In this document: positions 1-64,000 of the stretch, in pieces
Layout of the letters: the number at the start of each line of letters is the position of its first letter
How positions within the stretch are numbered: position 1 is the stretch's first letter
IMG/VR virus record: IMGVR_UViG_3300042889_001272
Span: 62,001 to 126,000 of that record
DNA: 64,000 nt
Strand: one strand, 5' to 3'
Translations under genes and position numbers: made by a program
The notes under the pieces: model-generated
The model's input: only the letters and a program-made list of their open reading frames with translations
Databases searched by the model: none
What the model was told of the DNA's origin: nothing

Positions 1-1111
1 GGGCATTCCTTTACACGAACGTGCCAAACTTGCAGGCGTAGCAGTTGATGCTGTGTTTGACAGTGTCAGTATTGGCACAACATACAAAGCTAAACTAGCA
101 GAAGAAGGAATTATCTTTTGCAGTTTTACAGAAGCAGTACAAGATCATCCGGAACTAGTTAAAGAATATCTAGGATCAGTTGTGCCTCAAGGTGACAACT
201 GGTTTGCCTGCATCAATTCAGCAGTGTTCAGTGATGGTAGTTTTGTATATATTCCTGAAGGTAAACGATGCCCTTTGGAGTTAAGCACTTACTTTAGAAT
301 TAACAGTGCCGGTAGCGGTCAATTTGAACGCACCTTAATTATAGCAGACAAGGATAGTTATGTATCTTACTTGGAGGGATGTACAGCACCCCAACGTGAC
401 GAGAATCAGTTACATGCCGCAGTGGTCGAACTTATTGCCCTTGATAGGGCAGAGATTAAATATTCAACTGTACAAAATTGGTACCCCGGCAACGAACACG
501 GGATTGGCGGAGTCTACAACTTTGTCACAAAACGTGCCCATTGTCGAGGAATTAAAAGTAGAGTTAGTTGGACTCAAGTGGAAACAGGATCAGCCATTAC
601 CTGGAAGTATCCAAGTTGCATATTGCAAGGTGACGGGAGTACCGGAGAGTTTTACTCAGTGGCGGTTACCAAAGGCCATCAACAAGCTGACACTGGTACA
701 AAAATGATTCACATTGGTGCTAATACTCGCAGTAAAATTATCAGCAAGGGTATTAGCATAGGTAACAGCACGATGACTTATCGTGGACTTGTGCGAATGA
801 ATCCCGGTGCTAAAAATGCTCGTAACTATACGCAATGCGATAGTTTGATGATTGGCAATAACAGTCGTAGTAACACTGTGCCTTACACAGATTGCAGAAA
901 TGATTCAGCGCAGATTGAACACGAAGCGACAACTGGCAGAGTAAGTGATGAAGAATTATATTATCTAGCCACTAGAGGATTAGATCCTGAACAGGCAGCA
1001 AGTGCCATTGTAAACGGCTTTTGCCGTAGTGTATTAAACACATTACCTTTAGAATTTGCGGCGGAAGCGAATAAATTACTAGCAGTAACCATGGAAGGAA
1101 GCATAGGATGA
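1..1111 (+). CDS. sufB: Fe-S cluster assembly scaffold SufB (5'-truncated by window edge)
   Basis: Frame open from base 2 ([23 protein letters not shown]...); SufB motifs [61 protein letters not shown]. Confidence 0.96.
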
Positions 1112-1413
1112 ACTTAGAAGAGATTAAACAATTGGTAGAAACAAACAAGGTAGTACTGTTTATGAAAGGTACACCACAATTTCCAGAATGCGGATTTAGT
1201 CAGCAGGCCACAAAAATTTTACGGGCTTGTAATGTTGAACAATTTGAAAGTCGCAATGTTTTAGCCGACGAGGCTTTGAGATCAAACATCAAACAATTCA
1301 GCAATTGGCCCACTGTTCCACAATTATATATCAAGGGCGAATTTATTGGCGGCAGTGATATTATGATGGAAATGTACCAAGCTGGCGAACTGGAAGTTTT
1401 ATTAAATGATTAA
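1108..1413 (+). CDS. grxD: Monothiol glutaredoxin (Grx4/GrxD)
   Basis: [17 protein letters not shown] (CGFS motif), [21 protein letters not shown]. Confidence 0.93.
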
Positions 1414-2059
1414 AGTAAGCAATCTATCAGCAAGTATCGGCAATAAACAAATTTTAAACAAGATTAGTTTTACAGTAGAACCCGGAGAATGTTTGTTGAT
1501 CACAGGACCAAACGGCAGCGGCAAATCAACCTTGCTACATACTATTATGGGTAGACCAGATATTAATGCCACAGGTAGTATTAAAATTCGCAGTGGAGAA
1601 ATAATTGACATGCTTTGTCATGATCGTAGTCAAGCAGGAGTATTCATGGCGCATCAAAGTCCTCCTGCCATCGATGGTATCAACACTATGACATTGTTTA
1701 AAGAAATACAAAAAGTTCAAAACGTTGCAGGCAGTACCGGTGAATTAATTAAACTTACCAAGTCATTATTTAAATGGATTGGCTTGCCCGAAGGCTGGGA
1801 GAAAAGACAGTTCAATAATGGTGCCAGCGGCGGTGAGCGTAAAAAAAATGAACTCACACAGGCCGTATATCTACAAGGCAAAACACAAGTCTTACTATTG
1901 GACGAACCCGACAGCGGATTAGAACAAAGCAGCCGTCAAAAAATAATTGATTTAATTCAAGAAACTAAAAATCGACGCGGATGTGTATTATTAGTCACAC
2001 ATGATAAAGAACTACAAGAATTATATAGTGCTAACAAATTGGATTTAAGTAATGCGTAA
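1406..2059 (+). CDS. sufC: Fe-S assembly ABC ATPase SufC
   Basis: Walker A GPNGSGKST, signature GASGGERKKNE, Walker B LLLDEPDSG; operon position. Confidence 0.87.
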   Translation: MIKVSNLSASIGNKQILNKISFTVEPGECLLITGPNGSGKSTLLHTIMGRPDINATGSIKIRSGEIIDMLCHDRSQAGVFMAHQSPPAIDGINTMTLFKEIQKVQNVAGSTGELIKLTKSLFKWIGLPEGWEKRQFNNGASGGERKKNELTQAVYLQGKTQVLLLDEPDSGLEQSSRQKIIDLIQETKNRRGCVLLVTHDKELQELYSANKLDLSNA

Positions 2060-2483
2060 AGTATATTTAGATGCTGACAGTTTGGATTTAGTATTGGTTC
2101 CTACACGACCCGAGTATGAATTTGTATTCATTCAGACTGAAGGTAAATGTATTGCTAACATCAAACTAAAACCTTTTCCCGATACAAAATTCAAAGTTAA
2201 GATTTATATCTACGCAGAAGGCACCAGCGAAGTAGATTGTGTTTGTACATTAGATGTACCTAAAGATGTCAGCGGAGTTGAAACAGATATTCAAATTCGC
2301 AGTTGGCCTTTTGATAAGAGTAAAATTAAAGCTCGTCCTGAAATGTTTATTGCTAATAGTAATATTATTGCTAATCATGGCAATGCTCTGGGAACATTAA
2401 AACCTGAGGATAATTATTATCTTGCCAGTAGAGGTATCACTGATTACAAAGAATTAGTTAAACAAAGTTTATTAAATGCGTGA
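2052..2483 (+). CDS. sufD: Short SufD-like protein (143 aa)
   Basis: KARPEMFIANSNIIANHGNALGTLKPEDNYYLASRGI resembles the SufD C-terminus (PxLeI..ddV.asHgat.G...lfYL.SRGi); lies between sufC and sufS. Confidence 0.65.
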   Translation: MRKVYLDADSLDLVLVPTRPEYEFVFIQTEGKCIANIKLKPFPDTKFKVKIYIYAEGTSEVDCVCTLDVPKDVSGVETDIQIRSWPFDKSKIKARPEMFIANSNIIANHGNALGTLKPEDNYYLASRGITDYKELVKQSLLNA

Positions 2484-3660
2484 ATATTTTCCTTTCTTCA
2501 AACGTAGACAAGATATAATTTATCTCGACAGTGCAGCCACAAGTCAAACTTTGTACACCGTTGTCGAAGATATGCAAGATTTTATGTTGAGTAATAAAAG
2601 CAATGCACATCGAAGCGGCAATAGCATGGGCACTTATGTTGACCAACAATATCAATCTAGCAAAGAACTCATAGGCAAATGGTTAAACATTAACAAACCC
2701 GAACAGCGTATTGTGTTTAACAGTGGCACGACACAGGGATTGAATGATGCCGCGTCAATGATTATGTGTGCAATGTCATCCGGTGTAGTATTTATTGGCA
2801 TCGATAGTCATCACAGTTTAATCTTGCCCTGGACACAGTCTGGTAATTCTAAATGGCGAGTTGTTTTCATTGAGTTAGACAAAGATGGCCGTTTAGATCT
2901 AAATGATTTAAAAACAAAAATTAAAGAAGAACCAATGGCTTTGGCAAAAGTCATTGCTGTAAATGCCGTTAGCAATGTACTTGGCCTAGTCAACGATTTA
3001 GATGGCATTAAAAAGATTGCTTTAGAATATGCCGCAGTAAGTTTAATCGATGCCAGTCAAGTCGTTAGTAAGCGTCGAATAGACATCAGTGGCTTTGATT
3101 TTGTTGCTTGGAGTTGGCACAAAGTTTACGGACCCATGGGTCTAGGATGCTTGCTCATAGACCCAGTGTGGCTAAACTTCAATCCAGTTCGCCCCGGAGG
3201 AGGAACAGTCACCAGTGTAAGCATGGATTCAGTGACTTGGCAAACCAATGCCGGCAAGTTTGAAAGTGGTACACAGAATCTTGCGGCTATTTGCACATTG
3301 CCTAAACTCGTTAATTGGTTAATCGAACATCAAGATGAAATAGAATCTCATGATATTGGACTTGCTAGAATCACTAATGACCACATATCCTTGGCACAAT
3401 TTACTCCGGTTAGTCGAACAGACTCCGGACTGATCTGCTTAGATCCGGTTGTTGGCGCAGTAGAAGATTATACAATGATGTTGGATGCCAAGAACATTAT
3501 GATTCGTAGTGGAAAATTGTGTGCCGAACCACTGATAGCACAAATTAGTAATAATGGCCTGTTAAGACTAAGCTGGGCTTGTTATACCACCAGACAAGAA
3601 ATAGAACAAGCATTTGACAGCTTGGGAGACATACATGCAAGACTTTCAAAACATGTTTAA
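2476..3660 (+). CDS. sufS: Cysteine desulfurase SufS (class V PLP enzyme)
   Basis: IYLDSAATSQ, SNAHRSG, LIDASQ, SWHKVYGPMGLG (PLP lysine), FESGTQN, RSGKLCAEP (catalytic Cys). Confidence 0.88.
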   Translation: MREYFPFFKRRQDIIYLDSAATSQTLYTVVEDMQDFMLSNKSNAHRSGNSMGTYVDQQYQSSKELIGKWLNINKPEQRIVFNSGTTQGLNDAASMIMCAMSSGVVFIGIDSHHSLILPWTQSGNSKWRVVFIELDKDGRLDLNDLKTKIKEEPMALAKVIAVNAVSNVLGLVNDLDGIKKIALEYAAVSLIDASQVVSKRRIDISGFDFVAWSWHKVYGPMGLGCLLIDPVWLNFNPVRPGGGTVTSVSMDSVTWQTNAGKFESGTQNLAAICTLPKLVNWLIEHQDEIESHDIGLARITNDHISLAQFTPVSRTDSGLICLDPVVGAVEDYTMMLDAKNIMIRSGKLCAEPLIAQISNNGLLRLSWACYTTRQEIEQAFDSLGDIHARLSKHV

Positions 3661-4009
3661 AGATTTATTTGAACTAGATGATGCCATGGACAAGTACGAA
3701 TGGATCATGGAATATGATGCCATTACCAAACCTGTGTTTACTGTTGTTAAGTCAGATGCAAATTTAGTTCAAGGTTGCACTAGTAATTTATGGGTTGAAA
3801 AGATTGATGAATGTATCTATTGCTATGGCGAAAGTTTAATTGTGCAGGGCATTGCATCAATGATCTGCGATTGGTTCAATCAAGCAAATAAAAAACAACA
3901 AATGGACTTTAGCTTAAATACACTTACTAATATAGGATTAGCACCATTGCTAAGTATGGGTAGACAAAACGGTGTTGCTAATTTAATAGCAAAGATTAAA
4001 ACATTATGA
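3653..4009 (+). CDS. sufE: Sulfur acceptor SufE
   Basis: NLVQGCTSNLW, GESLIVQGIA, LSMGRQNG; start moved to ATG 3653, which overlaps the sufS stop. Confidence 0.82.
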   Translation: MFKDLFELDDAMDKYEWIMEYDAITKPVFTVVKSDANLVQGCTSNLWVEKIDECIYCYGESLIVQGIASMICDWFNQANKKQQMDFSLNTLTNIGLAPLLSMGRQNGVANLIAKIKTL

Positions 4010-4185
4010 ACGAACTCGAAACTTTGTTGAAAATGCATGACTGGGGTCATGCGGGATACATTACTCGGCCAGCAGTGGATCAAGCCATGCGAGCTAATGC
4101 AGGTGCAGAAGCCACTGCACTATGGGAAAAATACTGTCCTTGGAGTGAGACTAACGGCGGATACATTGCCTGGAGCAAACAATGA
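4006..4185 (+). CDS. Small hypothetical protein (59 aa), not in ORF track
   Basis: ATG 4006 to TGA 4185 (MNELETLLKMHDWGHAGY...IAWSKQ); ATGA overlaps with both neighbours indicate translational coupling. Confidence 0.6.
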   Translation: MNELETLLKMHDWGHAGYITRPAVDQAMRANAGAEATALWEKYCPWSETNGGYIAWSKQ

Positions 4186-4541
4186 ACGAACAAATTGAAC
4201 AAGGTATTGTTGCTGGTTTAAAAACAGTATACGATCCGGAGATCCCAGTAAATATCTATGACTTGGGATTGATATACAAAATTGACGTTGATGATGTCGA
4301 TGTTAAAATTTTAATGACACTGACATCAGCATTTTGTCCCAGTGCGGAAGAGATTCCAGCAGAGGTGCGGGTTGTGGTAGAAAACGCTTTAAAAGAGTTA
4401 AATACTACGAGAACTATTTCAGTAGAAGTAGTGTTTGATCCTCCGTGGACTCCTGAAAGAGTATCCGAAGAGGCAAGATTAGAAATGGGAATGTACGATT
4501 ATGATCAAGAAAATTCTAGCCTGGATCACTGGCAAGAGTGA
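4182..4541 (+). CDS. sufT: DUF59/SufT-type Fe-S maturation protein
   Basis: LKTVYDPEIPVNIYDLGLIY, MTLTSAFCP, VFDPPWTPERVSEEARLEMG. Confidence 0.88.
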   Translation: MNEQIEQGIVAGLKTVYDPEIPVNIYDLGLIYKIDVDDVDVKILMTLTSAFCPSAEEIPAEVRVVVENALKELNTTRTISVEVVFDPPWTPERVSEEARLEMGMYDYDQENSSLDHWQE

Positions 4542-4866
4542 TACAGCAGTGGCAGAAGCCGCTCCTTATAAAGTTGAAGTAGTTACACCAAAAGCAGAAG
4601 AAATTCCACTTGGTACAGAAGCAACAATTATTGCAGTTTCGCATTCAGACATGCCGATTAATGCTTTAACAGTTGAAGTTGTTCCAAACGCAGTGGTACC
4701 AGCCGCAATTGAAACTTCTACAGTTACAGTTAAAGCAAAATATAAAAAAGCTGACTTGACTGCAATGACTAAAGCACAGTTAATGGAACTTGTTACAAAA
4801 CATGGTGTAGAAGTTAAAGCTCGCAGTACCAAAGAAGAACTAGTAAAAGTATTAGTAAAAGTATGA
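4501..4866 (+). CDS. Hypothetical protein with C-terminal HeH/LEM- or Rho-N-like helical domain
   Basis: C-terminal DLTAMTKAQLMELVTKHGVEVKARSTKEELVKVL. Confidence 0.55.
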   Translation: MIKKILAWITGKSDTAVAEAAPYKVEVVTPKAEEIPLGTEATIIAVSHSDMPINALTVEVVPNAVVPAAIETSTVTVKAKYKKADLTAMTKAQLMELVTKHGVEVKARSTKEELVKVLVKV

Positions 4867-5192
4867 TAGTTCTCACTGTCACCGACGAAGCCAAGAAGCA
4901 TATTATTGACATGTTGGATCGGTCCAATATGCCAGCAGTTCAGCTTGGTTTAGAAGCTCAGGGTTGTAATGGATACATGTATACCTGGACACCCATTTCT
5001 GATGCCTACGGTGAAGTAATAGAGCTTGACGACACACATAGTATAGTGTATAATAAATCTATTGTGCCACATATCATAGACAGCGTGGTAGAGATTGAAA
5101 AAACTGGATTTAATTCTAGATTAGTTTTGAACAATCCCAACGTTGCTTATGCGTGTGGTTGTGGCGAAAGTGTAAACTTTAAAAATGACTGA
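4863..5192 (+). CDS. sufA: A-type Fe-S carrier (IscA/SufA/HesB family)
   Basis: LTVTDEAKKHI, QGCNGYMY, NNPNVAYACGCGESV (three conserved Cys). Confidence 0.88.
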   Translation: MIVLTVTDEAKKHIIDMLDRSNMPAVQLGLEAQGCNGYMYTWTPISDAYGEVIELDDTHSIVYNKSIVPHIIDSVVEIEKTGFNSRLVLNNPNVAYACGCGESVNFKND

Positions 5193-5412
5193 ACCTGATT
5201 TAAACAAACAATTAAATGAGTTGATTGAACGTGAACGTGAGATTCTTAAAAAGATGAATGTTGCACGCCGCGCAGGCGTCAGCGAGGGTATTATCAGTCA
5301 GCTGACATATATGTTAGACGAAGTGCAATTTGCACAACAAGACATTAGAGCCAAGCAGGCTGCTGGCACAGGCAAAGACAATGATTTTGGTAGTTTTATC
5401 AGTATCGGATAA
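5185..5412 (+). CDS. Hypothetical protein
   Basis: ORF coupled to its neighbours; coiled-coil-like. Confidence 0.6.
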   Translation: MTEPDLNKQLNELIEREREILKKMNVARRAGVSEGIISQLTYMLDEVQFAQQDIRAKQAAGTGKDNDFGSFISIG

Positions 5413-5891
5413 TGTTAGACAACAAAGGCAATATGTACGTTGAAGAAGATGACATCATTGAATTAATGCTGTTGAATAGGCAAGCAAAAATTCTTCCTCG
5501 CAATATTCAAAGTTTTAAAATATTTGAATCAACTTGTAAATCGTATGGAATTAAAAATCCATTCGAGTTAGACAGTTCCACAGAAGATATAACTTGGAAT
5601 ATGCCCGAAGAGTATCGCAGACTCGATATTAGACAACATATAGAATCTAACTATACGTTGAGTAATATGCAGTTGGCAAGAGTTAATTTAGAATTAGATG
5701 AATTTGAAAAAAGAAACTTAACTGATCTATTAAGATTTTTAGTTTATTTTATCGACACAGTAAGAAAAAACAATATTGTCTATGGTGTTGGCCGAGGTAG
5801 TAGTATCGCAAGTTATGTATTATATTTGCTTAAAGTGCATCGTATAGATAGCATTAAATATAATTTAGATATCAAGGAATTTTTAAAATGA
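5412..5891 (+). CDS. DNA polymerase III alpha (DnaE)-like fragment
   Basis: RVNLELDEF...FLVYFIDTVRKNNIVYGVGRGSSIASYVLYLLKVHRIDSIKYNL matches the DnaE GxGRGS..GSlvaY.LgIt.iDP.ky.L segment; stops before the PDID catalytic motif. Confidence 0.7.
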   Translation: MLDNKGNMYVEEDDIIELMLLNRQAKILPRNIQSFKIFESTCKSYGIKNPFELDSSTEDITWNMPEEYRRLDIRQHIESNYTLSNMQLARVNLELDEFEKRNLTDLLRFLVYFIDTVRKNNIVYGVGRGSSIASYVLYLLKVHRIDSIKYNLDIKEFLK

Positions 5892-6642: not shown

Positions 6643-6671
6643 TTGACATTCGTCAGGGCTTAGTATATAAT
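6643..6671 (+). promoter_or_regulatory. sigma70-type promoter
   Basis: TTGACA (6643) - 17 nt - TATAAT (6666). Confidence 0.85.
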
Positions 6672-6677
6672 AATACT

Positions 6678-7619
6678 ATGACTACACAAAATTATCTCTG
6701 GGTTGAGAAGTATAGACCCGCCACTATTAAAGACTATGTTTGGATTAATCCTAGTCAAAAACTTATGGTCGAGGGCTGGGTTAAAGATAAAAATATTCCG
6801 CACTTGCTATTAAGCGGACCGCCTGGCACAGGAAAAACTACTTTAGCCAAAGTTCTATGCAATGAACTAGAAGTTCAAAAGGCGGACATCATGTTTATTA
6901 ATGCCAGTCACGAAACTGGTGTTGATAACCTGCGTGAGAAAGTCGGTAACTTCTGTCGCAGTATGAGCTTTGGTGACTTTCGTGTTATTATACTTGACGA
7001 GGCAGATTATCTAAGTCCTAATGCACAGGGTGTACTGCGTGGTATGTTAGAGCAGTACAGTAATGTAGCAAAGTTTATTCTAACTTGCAATATGCCACAT
7101 AAGGTCATGCCAGCGTTGCATAGTCGTTGTCAGGGGTTTAGTTTCAACAACTTAGATGAAACAGATTTTACAGTTAGATTAGGACAAATCCTAGCCGATG
7201 AAGGCTGTGACTTTGATGTAGACACGTTAACTAATTTTGTTAAAGCAACATATCCGGATCTGCGTAAAGCAATTAACACAGCGCAACAATACAGCCGCAG
7301 TGGTAAGTTAGAAATGCCAGGTGCTGGTCAAAGTACAGACAGCAGTGAGTGGAAGTTAGAAGCCATTGCGTTATTTCAAAATGGCAAAGTTAGACAAGCA
7401 CGTGAAATGATCTGTAAGAAAATTACATTAGAGGAATACGAAGAAGTTTATAAGTTCTTGTATCGTAATTTAGCGTTTTGGGGTGACGATGAAGACACAC
7501 AAGATGCAGCCATTATCATCATTAAAGAAGGAATGGTGAATCACAGTTTGTGTGCTGACCCTGAAATCAATTTAAGTGCTACTATTGTCAAACTAGACCG
7601 TATGCGCCGCGGATTATAA
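6678..7619 (+). CDS. Clamp loader AAA+ subunit (RFC small / T4 gp44-like)
   Basis: LWVEKYRP, GPPGTGKTT, IILDEAD, SRC motif, DLRKAIN. Confidence 0.9.
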   Translation: MTTQNYLWVEKYRPATIKDYVWINPSQKLMVEGWVKDKNIPHLLLSGPPGTGKTTLAKVLCNELEVQKADIMFINASHETGVDNLREKVGNFCRSMSFGDFRVIILDEADYLSPNAQGVLRGMLEQYSNVAKFILTCNMPHKVMPALHSRCQGFSFNNLDETDFTVRLGQILADEGCDFDVDTLTNFVKATYPDLRKAINTAQQYSRSGKLEMPGAGQSTDSSEWKLEAIALFQNGKVRQAREMICKKITLEEYEEVYKFLYRNLAFWGDDEDTQDAAIIIIKEGMVNHSLCADPEINLSATIVKLDRMRRGL

Positions 7620-14842: not shown

Positions 14843-18241
<3,399 letters not shown>

Positions 18242-21609: not shown

Positions 21610-22629
21610 ATGACTAAACGAATTGGTTTTGCTTGCAAATGGATTGACCACCCAGAACAAGTCGATGGAATTAAACCCAAAGACAATGCTAAAAAATATA
21701 ACACTGGCAGTACTACTATCACTTGGCTTAACCGTCAAACTCGTGAAGTAGCTGAACAAAAGTTATGGGACCTAATGGTTCAAAATCTCGAAGCTACACG
21801 TAAACTCGTAGAAAGAGTAGGACAACTTGAAGAAAATCTTAGGATGGTGCGCCTTGGCAGTGATCAGCTACCTGCTTATACCGAACCCAGCTGGAGTTAT
21901 TTCTGGCGCAGGCCAGATGTTATGGACTACTGTAGTAGAGTTTTTTCGAGTATTGGTGACATTGCTAGGACTACTGCTGTTCGCCTTAGCTTTCATCCTG
22001 GACAGTTTTGTGTTCTTGCTAGCGAAACTCCTGGAATTGTTGACCGGAGCATAGAAGAATTTGAATATCACACAGACATGGCTCGCTACATGGGCTATGG
22101 CCGTACGTTTCAAGACTTTAAGATTAATGTGCATATCGCAGGCCGTCGTGGTCCTCAAGGTATTAAAGATGTTATGCAACGTTTAACACCAGAAGCACGA
22201 AACATGATTACCATCGAGAACGATGAGATTTCTTGGGGCATTGACTCGAGCATAGAATTAGTGGATACTTGTGCATTAGTACTTGACATCCACCACCATT
22301 GGATTAAAACAGGAGAATATATTGAAAACAATGACGACCGTATTAAAAGGATTAGTGATAGCTGGCGCGGTGTGCGCCCTGTTATTCACTATAGTCTCAG
22401 CAGGGAAGATTATCTTGTCGAACACACCCGACACGAACGTCCCGCCTATGATGCGCTGATGGCTAGTGGCTACAAGCGCGGCAAGCTCAGAGCGCACAGT
22501 GATTTCTATTGGAATGACGCAGTAAATAACTGGGCCATAACACACAGCTCATGGGCAGATATTATGTGCGAAGCCAAGGGTAAAAACCTTGCCAGCTTTA
22601 AATTAAAGGAATTATTAAATGGAGTTTAG
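21610..22629 (+). CDS. uvsE: UV damage endonuclease UvsE/UVDE
   Basis: RIGFACK, RLSFHPGQFCVLAS, INVHIAG, ITIENDE, LVLDIHHH, HYSLSR, AHSDF, DIMCEAKGKNLA. Confidence 0.9.
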   Translation: MTKRIGFACKWIDHPEQVDGIKPKDNAKKYNTGSTTITWLNRQTREVAEQKLWDLMVQNLEATRKLVERVGQLEENLRMVRLGSDQLPAYTEPSWSYFWRRPDVMDYCSRVFSSIGDIARTTAVRLSFHPGQFCVLASETPGIVDRSIEEFEYHTDMARYMGYGRTFQDFKINVHIAGRRGPQGIKDVMQRLTPEARNMITIENDEISWGIDSSIELVDTCALVLDIHHHWIKTGEYIENNDDRIKRISDSWRGVRPVIHYSLSREDYLVEHTRHERPAYDALMASGYKRGKLRAHSDFYWNDAVNNWAITHSSWADIMCEAKGKNLASFKLKELLNGV

Positions 22630-47308: not shown

Positions 47309-47749
47309 ATGGATGAATTAGTACAATCAATGAAAAAGGCACTGGCAGATACATTTGCCTTTTATTTAAAAGCACACGGCTTTCACTGGAACGTAGAAGG
47401 TCGCACATTCTGTCAAGACCACCAAATGTTTAGTAACATCTACGAAGAAGTATACGGCAGCATCGATCAATTCGCAGAAGAAATTCGTGCTATGGATGCT
47501 TATGCTCCGGCAAGTTTTGTTCGCTTCAGTGAACTAACTAGTATCGAAGACGAAGTTAAAATTCTTAATGCCCAGGGTATGTTCGAGAAATTACTAGCAG
47601 ATAACTCCGTTGTATTAGCCAGTGTTGAACAAGCATACGCATTAGCTGAAGCAGCCGGTAATCATGGATTGAGCAACTTCTTAGCAGAGCGCCAAGATGC
47701 ACATGCCAAACATGGTTGGATGTTGAGATCTACACTAAAACAAAGATAA
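47309..47749 (+). CDS. dps: Dps / DNA-binding ferritin-like protein
   Basis: YLKAHGFHWNVEG, DHQMF..IYEE, DQFAEEIRA, KHGWMLRS; TAAATA at 47283. Confidence 0.92.
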   Translation: MDELVQSMKKALADTFAFYLKAHGFHWNVEGRTFCQDHQMFSNIYEEVYGSIDQFAEEIRAMDAYAPASFVRFSELTSIEDEVKILNAQGMFEKLLADNSVVLASVEQAYALAEAAGNHGLSNFLAERQDAHAKHGWMLRSTLKQR

Positions 47750-54927: not shown

Positions 54928-55811
54928 TGAAAGCACTTATAATTGGTCTAGGTTTCGGCCAGGCTGTTTATCTGCCTGTGCTAACTCAACTTGGTTATGA
55001 AGTAATTACTGTTGACATGGATACATCTAAAGGTGCTGATTTTTCAGACATTGAAGATGCTATTCGTGTTCACAGTAAATTTGATACTGTGAACATATGT
55101 ACTCCAAACTTTACGCATATCAAATTAGCAAGAGCTGTGGCTCCTCACGCGAATATTGTATTTGTTGAAAAGCCAGGTGTTGTTAACAGCGAAGCATGGC
55201 GATGGCTTTGTGCTGATTATCCCGGGACTCGTTTTATGATGGTAAAGAATAATCAATATCGTGATACTATTACACAGTTTAAAACACTTGCAGATCAAAG
55301 TCATACTGTTAGGGTTGTTTGGAATAATAAAAATCGTATTCCAAATCCAGGTAGTTGGTTTACTACAAAGGAACTGGCCTTTGGTGGTGTTAGTCGAGAT
55401 TTGATACCTCATATGTTAAGTTACTATGTAGCATTGACAGACTACACAAAAGGTAATAAACTATATGGTAACGCAACACAAAGACATGAACTCAAAGATC
55501 TTATTGATACTGATTATGGTAGCGTCAATCATGATGGCACTTACAATGTCGACGACTTCTGTGAATTTGAATTCAAAAACGGAGATACTACTTGGATATT
55601 AACTGCCAATTGGAAAGATGACAAAGCAGATGATGTTTATATTAGTTTTGACATGAAGAATTCTGCTGTTAGACATAAGTTAGGATTATGTCCAGAATCT
55701 GCATACAAAGCAATGATAGAAAACGCTGTTACAAACCTAAATAATGATATGTTCTGGAAAGAACAATTACAACAGGATCTTTGGATTCACCGACAAATAG
55801 AAAACTTATGA
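54927..55811 (+). CDS. Gfo/Idh/MocA family oxidoreductase
   Basis: IIGLGFG, ICTPNFTH, VFVEKP, GGVSRDLIPH. Confidence 0.8.
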   Translation: MKALIIGLGFGQAVYLPVLTQLGYEVITVDMDTSKGADFSDIEDAIRVHSKFDTVNICTPNFTHIKLARAVAPHANIVFVEKPGVVNSEAWRWLCADYPGTRFMMVKNNQYRDTITQFKTLADQSHTVRVVWNNKNRIPNPGSWFTTKELAFGGVSRDLIPHMLSYYVALTDYTKGNKLYGNATQRHELKDLIDTDYGSVNHDGTYNVDDFCEFEFKNGDTTWILTANWKDDKADDVYISFDMKNSAVRHKLGLCPESAYKAMIENAVTNLNNDMFWKEQLQQDLWIHRQIENL

Positions 55812-56956
55812 ACGCACGATCAATAACACGTAATACTCTAGCTGGTATTACTACTAGTCTTGCTATGGTGCCGGAAGTTGTTGCCTTTGCGCTGTTAGCA
55901 CACGTCAATCCTTTAGTGGGATTATATGCCGCAGTAATACTGGGATTAGTCACTGCTATATTTGGCGGACGTCCCGGACTTATCAGTGGAGGCGCCGGTA
56001 GCCTTGCAGTTGTCAGCGTGGCATTAGTAATCACACACGGAGTTGAATATCTATTTGCTTGTATTGTACTCATGGGCATTATACAATTCGCATTTGGTGC
56101 ATTTAAGTTAGGCAAGTTAATTAAATTAGTTAGTCCTAGTGTAATGACTGGTTTTGTCAACGGCTTGGCACTAGTAATTTTTACAGCACAGTTTCATCAA
56201 ATTCCTACACAAGGATTTGAATTGTATTATATGTTAGGTTTAATTGTAGTTACAATAGTTGGCGTAATTGTTGCTCCTATGATTACACGACATATTCCTG
56301 GTAGTTTGTTGGGCATTGTTCTTGTAACTGCTGTGGTATATATCTTTGGTATCAGTACAAAGACAGTGGGAGACATTGCACATATCAGCGGAGCATTACC
56401 TAGTTTCCATTTGCCCGATGTTCCTTTTACATTAGAAACACTACAGATAGTATTACCTTATAGTTTGATCCTTGCGGCAATTGGTTTGATTGAAACTTTA
56501 CTCACTGCTAACTTAGTAGATAAGACAATTGGCGGAGTTAATCAACCCAATAAAGAAAGCATAGCACAAGGTGCAGGTAATGTGTTGACAGGCCTGTTTG
56601 GTGGTATGGGAGGTTGTGCTATGATTGGACAAACAGTTATTAATTTAGAAGCCGGTGGACATCAGCGTTTGGCAGGGGTGGTTGAAGCATTAGCTATTCT
56701 TGCTTACATTGTATTTGCTAGTTTTATAATTGAATCGATTCCTATTGCGGCTTTAATTGGTGTAATGTGTGTGGTATGTTATCATACATTTGATTGGAAC
56801 AGTTTGAACTTTAAGGACAAACCTAAAGAAGATATTGCTGTCATGCTAACTGTCACTGTAACTACATTTATATTCAATTTGGCTTTTGCCGTTTTGTTAG
56901 GCATTTTGCTAACAAGTATGTTATACTACTGGAAACACGTTAAAGAAGCAACATGA
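55808..56956 (+). CDS. SulP/SLC26 family anion transporter lacking a STAS domain
   Basis: LAGITTSLAMVPEVVAFA, GLYAA, GGRPGLISG, NKESIAQGAGN, GGCAMIGQT. Confidence 0.88.
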   Translation: MNARSITRNTLAGITTSLAMVPEVVAFALLAHVNPLVGLYAAVILGLVTAIFGGRPGLISGGAGSLAVVSVALVITHGVEYLFACIVLMGIIQFAFGAFKLGKLIKLVSPSVMTGFVNGLALVIFTAQFHQIPTQGFELYYMLGLIVVTIVGVIVAPMITRHIPGSLLGIVLVTAVVYIFGISTKTVGDIAHISGALPSFHLPDVPFTLETLQIVLPYSLILAAIGLIETLLTANLVDKTIGGVNQPNKESIAQGAGNVLTGLFGGMGGCAMIGQTVINLEAGGHQRLAGVVEALAILAYIVFASFIIESIPIAALIGVMCVVCYHTFDWNSLNFKDKPKEDIAVMLTVTVTTFIFNLAFAVLLGILLTSMLYYWKHVKEAT

Positions 56957-63609: not shown

Positions 63610-63879
63610 ATGCCAGCGGTAAAACATCAGCAGATGAAAACACAACAACTGATTTCTCTTAATTTTTGGGAATCTAAACAATTAGAATATTGGCTGGCTG
63701 ACAATTTTCCAGATTGTCGAGTTCGTTGCCTTTATGATACTTGGTCCGGACATCCAGAAGTAGTCGAATGGTATGCCATAGAAGGTGATATAACAGTTGA
63801 CATGGAGTGCCTTCTGAAGTTAAAATACGGTAACAAATTAAAAAGCTCAAACGCAGGAATAAGACATGGACAAAATTAA
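63610..63879 (+). CDS. Hypothetical protein
   Basis: ORF. Confidence 0.45.
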
Positions 63880-64000
63880 AGTAAGCGAAATATTTTACAG
63901 CGCACAAGGCGAAGGTCGCTTTATTGGCGTACCCAGTGTGTTCTTTAGAACATTCGGCTGTAACTTTAAATGTGGCGGCTTTGGCTTGCCCGTAGGTCAA
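63866..64000 (+). CDS. queE: 7-carboxy-7-deazaguanine synthase QueE (3'-truncated by window edge)
   Basis: [36 protein letters not shown]; not in ORF track. Confidence 0.85.

What the first reader, a model, noticed from the sequence alone, without database searches (positions are those of the whole stretch)
1..5192. Phage-encoded near-complete SUF Fe-S biogenesis operon including carriers
Seen: sufB, grxD, sufC, sufD, sufS, sufE, sufT and sufA with overlapping start/stop codons and phage-like composition. Established: SUF works under oxidative stress and iron limitation. Individual suf genes are known in large phages, but scaffold, desulfurase and three carrier types together is a rich set. 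Inference: it supplies clusters to phage enzymes such as the radical-SAM QueE.
Basis: partly seen in the sequence, partly recalled or inferred. Interest (0 to 1): 0.6.

Follow-up and report, generated by a model that had tools for sequence, protein, structure and literature searches.

The report
Phage-encoded SUF iron-sulfur assembly operon
A roughly 350-kb T4-like phage of lakes carries its own complete but slimmed-down SUF pathway for building iron-sulfur clusters, beside about 18 radical-SAM enzymes, a ferredoxin and a SAM synthetase, so it probably supplies cofactors for its own enzymes.

Summary
Window 1-5192 encodes SufB (which starts 304 nt upstream of the window), a Grx4-type monothiol glutaredoxin, SufC, SufD, SufS, SufE, a DUF59/SufT protein and an A-type carrier. 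Two unassigned ORFs lie among them, and start and stop codons overlap by 4-8 nt.

It is not a chimera:
- The contig is a 235.6-kb IMG/VR virus record with a T4-type capsid gene.
- GC content and codon usage of the suf genes match the rest of the genome.
- The same operon sits between the same phage genes in more than 10 diverged phage contigs from independent assemblies, one of them 360 kb.
- dN/dS is 0.03-0.22.

Every catalytic or ligand residue I checked is kept.

Two things are new. SufD is cut down to 143 aa, the last beta-helix turns plus two helices, and keeps the residue equivalent to E. coli His360. It is predicted to pair with SufB (ipSAE 0.79, best control 0.00). SufC also lacks about 40 C-terminal residues.

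The nearest cellular SufB proteins are at most 67% identical and fall outside the phage clades.

The genome also encodes 17 radical-SAM ORFs, a QueE-like enzyme, FdxA, MetK and a Dps-like protein. I rate it a new variant of a known kind of phage auxiliary gene.

The parts
1..1111 (+). sufB, the Fe-S scaffold. The gene starts 304 nt upstream of the window and encodes 471 aa in full.
   Evidence: TIGR01980 513 bits and PRK11814 691 bits. 626 bits to E. coli SufB 5AWF_A. Cys229, Cys381 and Glu408-His409-Glu410 correspond to E. coli C254, C405 and E432-H433-E434. It lacks the E. coli N-terminal Cys-rich insert.
1108..1413 (+). Grx4-family monothiol glutaredoxin (CGFS type)
   Evidence: TIGR00365 145.7 bits, above the 117.1 cut-off. 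CGFS motif at residue 28. Absent from relatives L005-L008.
1406..2059 (+). sufC ABC-type ATPase, short form (217 aa)
   Evidence: TIGR01978 E 1e-45. Aligned to E. coli SufC residues 1-208. Lys40, Gln84, the SGGERK signature, Asp166-Glu167 and His199 are kept; about 40 C-terminal residues are missing.
2052..2483 (+). mini-sufD (143 aa): the last beta-helix turns plus two helices, keeping the His ligand
   Evidence: SUFBD_core 31.7 bits over model positions 178-220. His109 aligns with E. coli SufD His360 and is invariant in 14 homologs. AlphaFold2 pLDDT 92.9. The top Foldseek hits are all SufB/SufD chains. Predicted to bind SufB: ipSAE 0.79, best control 0.00. 270 homolog clusters; the 120 listed are 137-145 aa. 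dN/dS 0.03-0.18.
2476..3660 (+). sufS, type II cysteine desulfurase
   Evidence: Aminotran_5 249 bits; TIGR01979 240 bits. 174 bits to B. subtilis SufS. PLP Lys216 and catalytic Cys349 are kept.
3653..4009 (+). sufE, sulfur acceptor (118 aa from the ATG at 3653)
   Evidence: Pfam SufE 67.8 bits. Cys42 sits in a GC-S-W context. The start was chosen by the 8-nt overlap and by the 118-aa gene call in L052.
4006..4185 (+). orf59, unassigned small ORF found in only some relatives
   Evidence: No Pfam, NCBIfam or PHROG match. Present only in L003 and L045 among the loci examined.
4182..4541 (+). DUF59 / SufT-type Fe-S maturation factor
   Evidence: FeS_assembly_P 64 bits; TIGR02945 121 bits, below its 143 cut-off. 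Conserved Cys52.
4501..4866 (+). orf121, unassigned. Its C-terminal 40 aa resemble a short helix motif common in phage proteins. Probably not part of the pathway.
   Evidence: No Pfam or NCBIfam match. Weak PHROG hits to C-terminal motifs only. Conserved in the clade, with dN/dS 0.29-0.39.
4863..5192 (+). A-type Fe-S carrier (SufA/IscA family)
   Evidence: Fe-S_biosyn 32.6 bits (cut-off 26.3); TIGR01997 60.7 bits. Cys35, Cys98 and Cys100 form a C-X62-C-G-C pattern.
47309..47749 (+). Dps/ferritin-family protein, a possible iron buffer or source. Its link to the operon is inferred.
   Evidence: PF00210 75.5 bits. Dps models 39-47 bits, below their cut-offs.
55781..56956 (+). SulP-family permease (391 aa, no STAS domain). 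A link to sulfur supply is possible, but the substrate is unknown.
   Evidence: PF00916 162 bits. TIGR00815 183 bits, below its cut-off; BicA and DauA models score similarly.
63866..64000 (+). 5' end of a QueE-like radical-SAM gene (286 aa, running to genome position 126726), a candidate client
   Evidence: phrog_2076 'QueE-like radical SAM domain' 172.8 bits. The N-terminal 33 aa align to E. coli QueE 6NHL. No Pfam hit. No QueC above cut-off in the contig.

Best explanation
This is a vertically inherited, functional SUF-type iron-sulfur assembly pathway in a lineage of roughly 350-kb T4-like freshwater phages.

Proposed mechanism, with each step inferred from conserved residues and from the E. 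coli system:
1. SufS (PLP Lys216, Cys349) takes sulfur from cysteine.
2. It passes the sulfur as a persulfide to SufE Cys42, and from there to SufB Cys229.
3. The cluster is built at the interface between SufB (Cys381, Glu408-His409-Glu410) and a miniature SufD that keeps only the dimerising beta-helix turns and the His109 ligand.
4. A shortened but motif-complete SufC ATPase drives the cycle.
5. Grx4, the DUF59/SufT protein and an A-type carrier deliver clusters to apo-proteins.

Expressed from the phage genome, the pathway would raise Fe-S supply in the infected cell independently of host regulation. The main beneficiaries are most likely the phage's own Fe-S enzymes. These are about 18 radical-SAM proteins, many carrying an extra twitch/SPASM cluster domain, plus a 7Fe ferredoxin. 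The phage also encodes MetK for SAM and a Dps-like protein.
For: Gene identities.

Catalytic and ligand residues kept in every component.

Purifying selection: dN/dS is 0.05-0.08 for sufB, 0.03-0.18 for mini-sufD, 0.05-0.19 for sufS and 0.07-0.22 for sufE.

Conserved operon and phage flanks: seen in L003-L012, L045 and L047, and in the more distant L018, L021 and L041. Also seen in ENA and Logan assemblies, including a 360,465-bp contig.

SufB phylogeny: the mini-SufD phage clade is monophyletic (99*). All 80 nearest cellular SufB proteins (61-67% identity) lie on the other side of a 96* branch.

Composition matches the phage genome.

Mini-SufD:
- It folds confidently as a SufB/D-type beta-helix.
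- It is predicted to bind SufB: ipSAE 0.79, best control 0.00. That mark was reached by 58 of 80 solved complexes and by 2 of 110 mismatched pairs. The three runs agree in at least 98% of contacts, and the partner's pLDDT is at least 87.
- The predicted interface is SufB 385-415 against mini-SufD 86-115. It includes His109 and lies next to Cys381.

Candidate clients and supplies:
- 17 PF04055 hits in the contig.
- N-terminal twitch radical-SAM paralogs (NF033640), 248-532 bits.
- B12-binding radical-SAM.
- QueE-like gene.
- FdxA, 168 bits, above its cut-off.
- MetK.
- Dps-like protein.
- The contig of relative L008 carries 15 radical-SAM hits.
- Another SufB-bearing large phage contig carries 9.

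Contigs from RNA libraries of lake metatranscriptomes cover sufB-grx-sufC and sufA of close relatives.
Against: - No biochemical data exist for any phage SUF protein.
- SufC, SufS, SufE and SufA score below the NCBIfam equivalog cut-offs. They are divergent, and specificity could have shifted.
- Whether the shortened SufC still docks on a SufD that lacks most of its C-terminal helical domain was not tested.
- The complex prediction can score high from memory of the solved E. coli SufBCD structure.
- The RNA-library contigs could be carried-over DNA.
- The host is unknown, so host SUF/ISC capacity, and therefore the need for a phage copy, is unknown.
- That phage rather than host enzymes are the main clients rests only on co-occurrence.
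- grx and orf59 are dispensable in some relatives.
Confidence: 0.72

Rival explanations
1. Classical host-directed auxiliary gene set. The operon mainly keeps host Fe-S enzymes working (respiration, central metabolism, nucleotide synthesis) under oxidative stress or iron limitation in oxic lake water. This would sustain energy supply during a long infection, rather than serve phage enzymes.
For: SUF is the stress-resistant pathway in bacteria (established knowledge). A Dps-like protein is co-encoded. Papers on viral Fe-S genes interpret them this way (PMC8940887). Some SufB-bearing viral contigs carry few or no radical-SAM genes in the part sequenced (G001 and G010: 0).
Against: The phage itself encodes an unusually large Fe-S client load together with FdxA and MetK. 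The same co-occurrence is seen in relatives whose contigs cover that region. The two roles are not exclusive.
Confidence: 0.2
2. Assembly chimera or host contamination: a bacterial suf operon wrongly joined to phage DNA.
For: SufB is 61-67% identical to proteobacterial SufB. One GenBank 'phage' record with suf genes (Microcystis phage MaAM05) has panB, panC and pxpA as neighbours, and its SufB sits among cellular sequences. Such artefacts therefore do exist.
Against: The same gene order and the same phage flanks occur in more than 10 diverged contigs from different samples and assemblers. Contigs at 100% identity cross the upstream junction in independent runs. GC, GC3 and codon usage are those of the phage. 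No cellular SufB among 185,579 species representatives exceeds 67% identity, and the phage clades are separate from them. The 143-aa SufD sits on contigs of 335-360 kb, and its Atlas cluster is labelled Viruses.
Confidence: 0.01
3. Decaying or repurposed system. SufD is a remnant, and the working scaffold is a SufB2C2 homodimer as in minimal archaeal systems. Alternatively, SufS and SufE act mainly as a sulfur relay for thio-modification of nucleic acids rather than for cluster assembly.
For: SufD has lost about 280 residues and SufC about 40. SufB2C2 scaffolds are functional in methanogens (PMC12584684, listed). SufS and SufE are very divergent.
Against: - Mini-SufD is under strong purifying selection, with dN/dS 0.03-0.18.
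- Its length is fixed across 270 clusters.
- His109 is invariant.
- It is predicted to bind the SufB face that carries Cys381.
- Three carrier types and an intact SufB argue for cluster assembly.
- SufB scores only 157 bits against the SmsB model, whose cut-off is 650.
Confidence: 0.07

Closest known systems
E. coli-type SUF system (sufABCDSE; SufBC2D scaffold, structure 5AWF)
   Same: All six functions are present in one co-directional operon. It uses a SufE-dependent type II desulfurase. SufB is 626 bits to E. coli SufB, with the sulfur-acceptor Cys, the cluster Cys and the Glu-His-Glu motif conserved. The SufD His360 equivalent is conserved. The SufC ATPase motifs are intact.
   Different: - SufD is 143 aa instead of 423: it lacks the N-terminal domain, most of the beta-helix, and most of the C-terminal helical domain.
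- SufC lacks about 40 C-terminal residues.
- SufB lacks the N-terminal Cys-rich insert.
- Grx4 and DUF59 genes are built into the operon.
- It is encoded by a phage.
- No regulator gene lies within or beside the cluster.
Fe-S auxiliary genes of T4-like marine phages (Nishimura et al. 2017, PMC5332604), and viral sufE, sufA, iscU and nifU (PMC8940887)
   Same: T4-like phages that carry an A-type carrier, grx and a DUF59 ('paaD') gene together with up to 12 radical-SAM genes. The authors proposed that the assembly genes serve virally encoded Fe-S proteins.
   Different: Those genomes carry only carriers or single accessory genes. One study notes sufE without sufS. Here the core machinery is also phage-encoded: SufB, SufC, SufD, SufS and SufE.
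SufB as a host-like auxiliary gene in amoC phages (bioRxiv 10.64898/2026.06.18.733297)
   Same: Large freshwater phages (155-338 kb) that encode SufB and a radical-SAM enzyme.
   Different: There SufB is highly similar to the predicted host's gene and groups with it. Here SufB is at most 67% identical to any cellular representative and forms phage-only clades.
Minimal SUF-like systems (SufB2C2 / SmsCB of archaea, e.g. 9H78)
   Same: A reduced scaffold. SmsB appears among the fold matches of mini-SufD.
   Different: The phage keeps a separate SufD-derived subunit as well as SufS and SufE. SufB scores far below the SmsB model cut-off (157 against 650 bits).
Short SUFBD_core proteins in other reduced genomes (ESM Atlas clusters of 149 aa, bacterial, and 199 aa, Nanobdellota)
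   Same: Similar length and the same Pfam family. Feature scores 0.92.
   Different: These are leads only: no alignment or genomic context was available. The query's own cluster is labelled 100% viral.

Membership tests
SUF Fe-S assembly system (E. coli type) | SufB scaffold with the sulfur-acceptor Cys (E. coli C254), the cluster-site Cys (C405) and the Glu-His-Glu motif (432-434) | tested here: met
   Alignment to 5AWF_A. C229, C381, E408, H409 and E410 are invariant in 21 sequences. TIGR01980 is above its cut-off.
SUF Fe-S assembly system (E. coli type) | SufC ABC ATPase with Walker A, Q-loop, signature, Walker B and H-loop | tested here: met
   All five motifs align to E. coli SufC. The protein stops 18 residues after the H-loop His199, and TIGR01978 is below its cut-off.
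SUF Fe-S assembly system (E. coli type) | Full-length SufD paralog (about 420 aa) with N-terminal, beta-helix and C-terminal domains | tested here: not met
   143 aa. Only E. coli SufD residues about 341-382 align. TIGR01981 scores 35.7 bits against a 222 cut-off.
SUF Fe-S assembly system (E. coli type) | SufD His360 ligand and heterodimerisation with SufB | tested here: met
   His109 aligns with His360 and is invariant. Binding to SufB is predicted only: ipSAE 0.79, best control 0.00.
SUF Fe-S assembly system (E. coli type) | Type II cysteine desulfurase with PLP Lys and catalytic Cys, plus a SufE partner with an acceptor Cys | tested here: met
   Lys216 and Cys349. SufE is above its Pfam cut-off, with Cys42. 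The equivalog models are below their cut-offs.
SUF Fe-S assembly system (E. coli type) | Cluster assembly and transfer activity | not testable with these tools
   Needs biochemistry or complementation.
A-type Fe-S carrier (SufA/IscA/ErpA) | Three conserved Cys in a C-X(about 63)-C-G-C pattern | tested here: met
   Cys35, Cys98 and Cys100. Pfam Fe-S_biosyn is above its cut-off. The subfamily (SufA, IscA or ErpA) is not resolved.
Grx4-family monothiol glutaredoxin | CGFS active site and the family model | tested here: met
   TIGR00365 145.7 bits against a 117.1 cut-off. CGFS at residue 28.
Phage auxiliary metabolic gene (not host contamination) | Lies inside a bona fide phage genome, is flanked by phage genes on both sides, and is conserved in related phages | tested here: met
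Minimal SUF-like SmsCB system | SmsB-type scaffold without SufD, SufS or SufE | tested here: not met
   NF052511 scores 157 bits against a 650 cut-off. sufD', sufS and sufE are all present.

The most novel reading that the evidence does not exclude
This phage lineage carries a self-sufficient radical-SAM platform. It has its own Fe-S assembly line (SUF with the smallest SufD seen here's searches), its own electron donor (FdxA), its own SAM supply (MetK), a Dps-like iron buffer, and an array of N-terminal-twitch radical-SAM paralogs that make an as yet unknown product.

On this reading, the 143-aa SufD defines the minimal functional SufD: the dimer-interface beta-turns plus the His ligand. It would have co-evolved with a shortened SufC. 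SufC length tracks SufD length across the phage clades:
- SufC 217-220 aa with SufD 143-156 aa
- SufC 236-237 aa with SufD 193-194 aa
- SufC 231-241 aa with SufD 392-438 aa
Probability: 0.35. Interest if true: 0.8.

Novelty: new variant of a known kind. Interest (0 to 1): 0.62.

Why it matters
Phage Fe-S genes have so far been reported as single carriers or accessory factors. Those must plug into the host machinery.

A complete phage-encoded core pathway (desulfurase, sulfur shuttle, scaffold, ATPase and three carrier types), conserved under purifying selection in a widespread lake phage lineage, would show that very large phages can take over cofactor biogenesis itself.

The miniature SufD and shortened SufC are a natural deletion experiment on a scaffold whose mechanism is still debated. 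They point to which parts of SufD are indispensable.

The co-encoded radical-SAM arsenal, ferredoxin and SAM synthetase make the link between cofactor supply and phage-specific chemistry directly testable. The compact operon could also be a useful tool for maturing radical-SAM enzymes heterologously.

Tried and rejected
- Megablast of the operon against GenBank phages found nothing.
- tblastn of SufB against GenBank phages gave only prophage-edge fragments and Microcystis phage MaAM05. That record's suf region has bacterial housekeeping neighbours, and its SufB nests among cellular sequences, so it is not a convincing precedent.
- No tRNA genes in the window.
- Promoter and terminator scans were uninformative: 28 sigma-70-like sites against 26 expected. 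The T4 late-promoter octamer occurs once in the window against 6.7 expected. The timing of expression therefore could not be inferred.
- Terminase_6N, PALP (CysK), PAPS reductase and QueC were not found in this 66%-complete contig. Absence from a fragment proves little.
- Literature searches for a complete phage suf operon found none in the held library. This is not proof that none is published.
- orf59 and orf121 got no assignment.
- The 1.84-billion-protein profile search was not used, because no claim here rests on absence of relatives and it returns no taxonomy.
- A SufC/mini-SufD complex could not be tested, because the single complex job went to SufB/mini-SufD.

Full report
**What is in the sequence**

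The window is bases 62001-126000 of a 235,561-bp IMG/VR virus record that CheckV rates 66% complete, which implies a genome of about 350 kb.

Between window 1 and 5192 there is one uninterrupted, co-directional run of genes. Family scans identify them as follows.

| Gene | Window coordinates | Size | Key evidence |
|---|---|---|---|
| sufB | -304..1111 | 471 aa | Cut by the window edge; full gene is L001:1196-2611 |
| Grx4-family monothiol glutaredoxin | 1108-1413 | 101 aa | Above the NCBIfam cut-off |
| sufC | 1406-2059 | 217 aa | TIGR01978 best hit, below cut-off |
| sufD | 2052-2483 | 143 aa | Partial SUFBD_core match |
| sufS | 2476-3660 | 394 aa | Aminotran_5, TIGR01979 |
| sufE | 3653-4009 | 118 aa | Pfam SufE |
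| DUF59/SufT | 4182-4541 | 119 aa | FeS_assembly_P |
| A-type carrier | 4863-5192 | 109 aa | Fe-S_biosyn |

Two ORFs without any family lie among them: orf59 (4006-4185) and orf121 (4501-4866). Adjacent genes overlap by 4 or 8 nt at every junction, except 41 nt at sufT/orf121. The qualifications are that sufB starts outside the window, that two extra ORFs are present, and that sufD is a miniature.

**Is it really phage DNA?**

The contig has these phage genes:
- a T4-type major capsid gene (gp23 family, 270 bits)
- a family-B DNA polymerase, a tail fibre and an ATP-dependent protease
- a gp44-like clamp loader, PhoH and a gp31/GroES-like head-morphogenesis gene immediately downstream of the operon

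GC content (0.33-0.41) and GC3 of the suf genes equal the genome means (0.378 and 0.311). The codon usage of the suf block is no further from the rest of the genome than a typical 10-gene block (0.092 against a mean of 0.101). By contrast, the nearest cellular sufB genes average 56% GC.

A search of IMG/VR with SufB returned 45 loci. In L003-L012, L045 and L047 the same operon lies between the same phage genes, with SufB identities of 75-100%. L018, L021 and L041 are a more distant set with the same order. An ENA SPAdes assembly gives a 360,465-bp contig at 46x coverage with the same arrangement, and a Logan assembly does too.

The stretch is held by lake or freshwater metagenomes from 21 studies. 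Contigs at 100% identity in two independent runs include one that crosses the junction between the upstream phage gene and sufB.

**Are the proteins intact?**

Residues were checked by alignment to solved structures.

| Protein | Residues kept (phage numbering) | E. coli equivalent or note |
|---|---|---|
| SufB | Cys229; Cys381; Glu408-His409-Glu410 | C254; C405; E432-H433-E434. Invariant in 21 phage and bacterial sequences. Lacks only the E. coli N-terminal Cys-rich insert |
| SufC | Lys40; Gln84; SGGERK signature; Asp166-Glu167; His199 | Ends 18 residues after His199; lacks about 40 C-terminal residues |
| SufS | PLP Lys216; Cys349 | |
| SufE | Cys42 | |
| Glutaredoxin | CGFS motif at residue 28 | |
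| DUF59/SufT | Cys52 | |
| A-type carrier | C-X62-C-G-C (Cys35, Cys98, Cys100) | |

Pairwise dN/dS against four relatives is 0.05-0.08 for sufB, 0.03-0.18 for sufD, 0.05-0.19 for sufS, 0.07-0.22 for sufE and 0.13-0.22 for sufT, wherever dS is not saturated. The genes are being maintained by selection in the phage lineage.

**The miniature SufD**

The 143-aa protein matches only the last part of the SufBD core. E. coli SufD residues 341-382 align to phage residues 90-131, which puts phage His109 on the essential His360.

His109 is invariant across 14 homologs, including the 193-194-aa forms of the distant clade. AlphaFold2 gives a confident model (pLDDT 92.9) of nine beta strands and two helices. 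All of the top Foldseek matches are SufB, SufD or SmsB chains.

There is no room for a lost N-terminal part, because sufC ends 8 nt after sufD starts. The word search found 270 homolog clusters. The 120 listed are 137-145 aa, and some lie on contigs of 335-360 kb.

A complex prediction of SufB with mini-SufD scored ipSAE 0.79 against 0.00 for the best of three controls. That mark was reached by 58 of 80 solved complexes and by 2 of 110 mismatched pairs. The runs agree in at least 98% of contacts, and the partner's pLDDT is at least 87. The interface pairs SufB 385-415 with mini-SufD 86-115 through antiparallel strands. This places His109 beside the SufB segment that carries Glu408-His409-Glu410 and next to Cys381.

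This is the arrangement known for E. coli SufB-SufD, so the pass may partly reflect the model's memory of that structure. It shows likeness, not binding.

Across phage clades, SufC length tracks SufD length:
- SufC 217-220 aa with SufD 143-156 aa
- SufC 236-237 aa with SufD 193-194 aa
- SufC 231-241 aa with SufD 392-438 aa

This suggests co-reduction. I could not test whether SufC docks on mini-SufD.

**Origin**

Among one genome per 185,579 prokaryotic species, the closest SufB proteins are 61-67% identical. They come from various Alpha-, Beta- and Gammaproteobacteria and a few Bacteroidota.

In a maximum-likelihood tree of 117 sequences:
- The mini-SufD phages form one clade (99*).
- They join the 193-aa-SufD phages and L037 (support 85).
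- All 80 cellular sequences, plus the doubtful MaAM05 record, lie on the other side of a 96* branch.
- Three further viral clades also stand apart.

This is a quick-method tree, the cellular sample is biased to sequences sharing 8-mers with the query, and the root is unknown. Even so, there is no sign of a recent host donor. This contrasts with the host-like SufB of the amoC phages.

SufB is far more conserved against bacteria than SufC, SufS, SufE and SufA are (about 25-40% in tblastn). Identities between phages also vary strongly gene by gene, which indicates recombination within the lineage.

**Why would a phage need it?**

The contig holds 17 matches to the radical-SAM family, 16 of them above the cut-off. 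Thirteen ORFs cluster at genome 143-166 kb.

Eight ORFs carry a radical-SAM core with extra cluster-related domains:
- Five carry an N-terminal SPASM/twitch domain before the radical-SAM core. One of these is an 850-aa protein with two such units, and four of them match NCBIfam NF033640 at 248-532 bits.
- Two are about 490-aa proteins at genome 22-25.7 kb, one with a B12-binding domain.
- A QueE-like gene (phrog_2076, 173 bits) starts at window 63866.

The contig also encodes:
- a proteobacterial-type 7Fe ferredoxin FdxA (168 bits, above cut-off)
- the SAM synthetase MetK directly after the QueE-like gene
- a Dps/ferritin-family protein at window 47309-47749
- a SulP-family permease at window 55781-56956

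A relative whose contig covers the equivalent region has 15 radical-SAM matches. Another SufB-bearing phage contig of about 370 kb (by CheckV completeness) has 9.

It is broader than QueE alone, but it still rests on co-occurrence.

RNA-library contigs from lake metatranscriptomes cover sufB-grx-sufC and sufA of relatives at about 92-99% identity. This is compatible with expression but does not prove it.

**Comparison with what is known**

Viral Fe-S genes are established auxiliary genes. sufA and iscU were found in viromes. One study reported sufE without sufS (PMC8940887).

Most relevant is a T4-like marine genome with an A-type carrier, grx, a DUF59 gene called paaD, and 12 radical-SAM genes. 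Its authors already proposed service to viral Fe-S proteins (PMC5332604).

Six full-text searches of the held library found no report of a phage with the whole core pathway.

Functionally the operon works like the E. coli sufABCDSE system. As to membership, every defining feature tested is met except a full-length SufD. It is not an SmsCB-type minimal system. Short SUFBD_core proteins may also exist in some reduced cellular genomes, but that is an ESM Atlas lead only.

**Verdict**

This is a real, conserved, phage-encoded and complete SUF pathway with a miniaturised scaffold partner, in a widespread lineage of very large T4-like lake phages that are exceptionally rich in radical-SAM enzymes. 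It is a new variant of a known kind of phage auxiliary function. The mechanism is inferred from conserved residues and a supported, but not proven, SufB/mini-SufD interface. Which proteins receive the clusters remains to be shown.

Noticed in passing
genome 143265-166190 (outside the window; L050 and L051): A tandem array of 13 radical-SAM ORFs. Several are paralogs with an N-terminal SPASM/twitch domain ahead of the radical-SAM core (NCBIfam NF033640, 248-532 bits), and one is an 850-aa protein with two such units. Their product is unknown. A relative (the contig of L008) has 15 radical-SAM matches.
   Followed up: partly
genome 22001-25664 (L049) and 1441-2391 (L048): Two radical-SAM proteins of about 490 aa, one of them with a B12-binding domain (weak matches to lipid and P-methyltransferase families), plus a further 316-aa radical-SAM ORF.
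   Followed up: partly
genome 42711-43034 (L135:711-1034): A proteobacterial-type 7Fe ferredoxin FdxA (NF045490, 168 bits, above its cut-off). It is a possible electron donor for the radical-SAM enzymes and a hint that the host is a proteobacterium.
   Followed up: partly
window 63866-64000, continuing to genome 126726; MetK at genome 127064-128164 (L136): A QueE-like radical-SAM gene with an unusual C-X3-C-X36-C spacing of its cluster cysteines, followed one gene later by an S-adenosylmethionine synthetase. No QueC was found in the contig.
   Followed up: partly
window 47309-47749: A Dps/ferritin-family protein (PF00210, 75.5 bits) in a phage. It may buffer or supply iron.
   Followed up: partly
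window 55781-56956: A SulP-family permease of 391 aa without a STAS domain. The sulfate, bicarbonate and dicarboxylate transporter models all score similarly, so the substrate is unknown.
   Followed up: partly
window 5412-5891: A 159-aa ORF matching only a short part of the DNA polymerase III alpha NTPase domain (PF07733, 42.6 bits). It is conserved next to the suf operon across the clade and in more distant phages.
   Followed up: no
window 6643-6671 (L001:8143-8171): A perfect sigma-70 consensus (TTGACA, 17 nt, TATAAT) lies a few bases upstream of the clamp-loader gene at 6678. No comparable site precedes sufB.
   Followed up: no
L004-L009 compared with the window: Identity to the window varies strongly from gene to gene within one relative. 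In L006, for example, SufB is 92%, SufD 83%, SufC 61% and SufS 58%. grx and orf59 are present in only some genomes. This points to recombination and gene turnover inside the operon.
   Followed up: partly
L002 (MW495066.1, 258786-273876): The GenBank record 'Microcystis phage MaAM05' carries sufBCDS-iscU next to panB, panC and pxpA. Its SufB groups with betaproteobacterial sequences. This end of the record looks like bacterial DNA.
   Followed up: partly
window 21610-22629 and 14843-18241: A UvdE-type UV damage endonuclease (PF03851, 120 bits), and a 1132-aa tail fibre whose PHROG matches include a collagen-like minor tail family.
   Followed up: no
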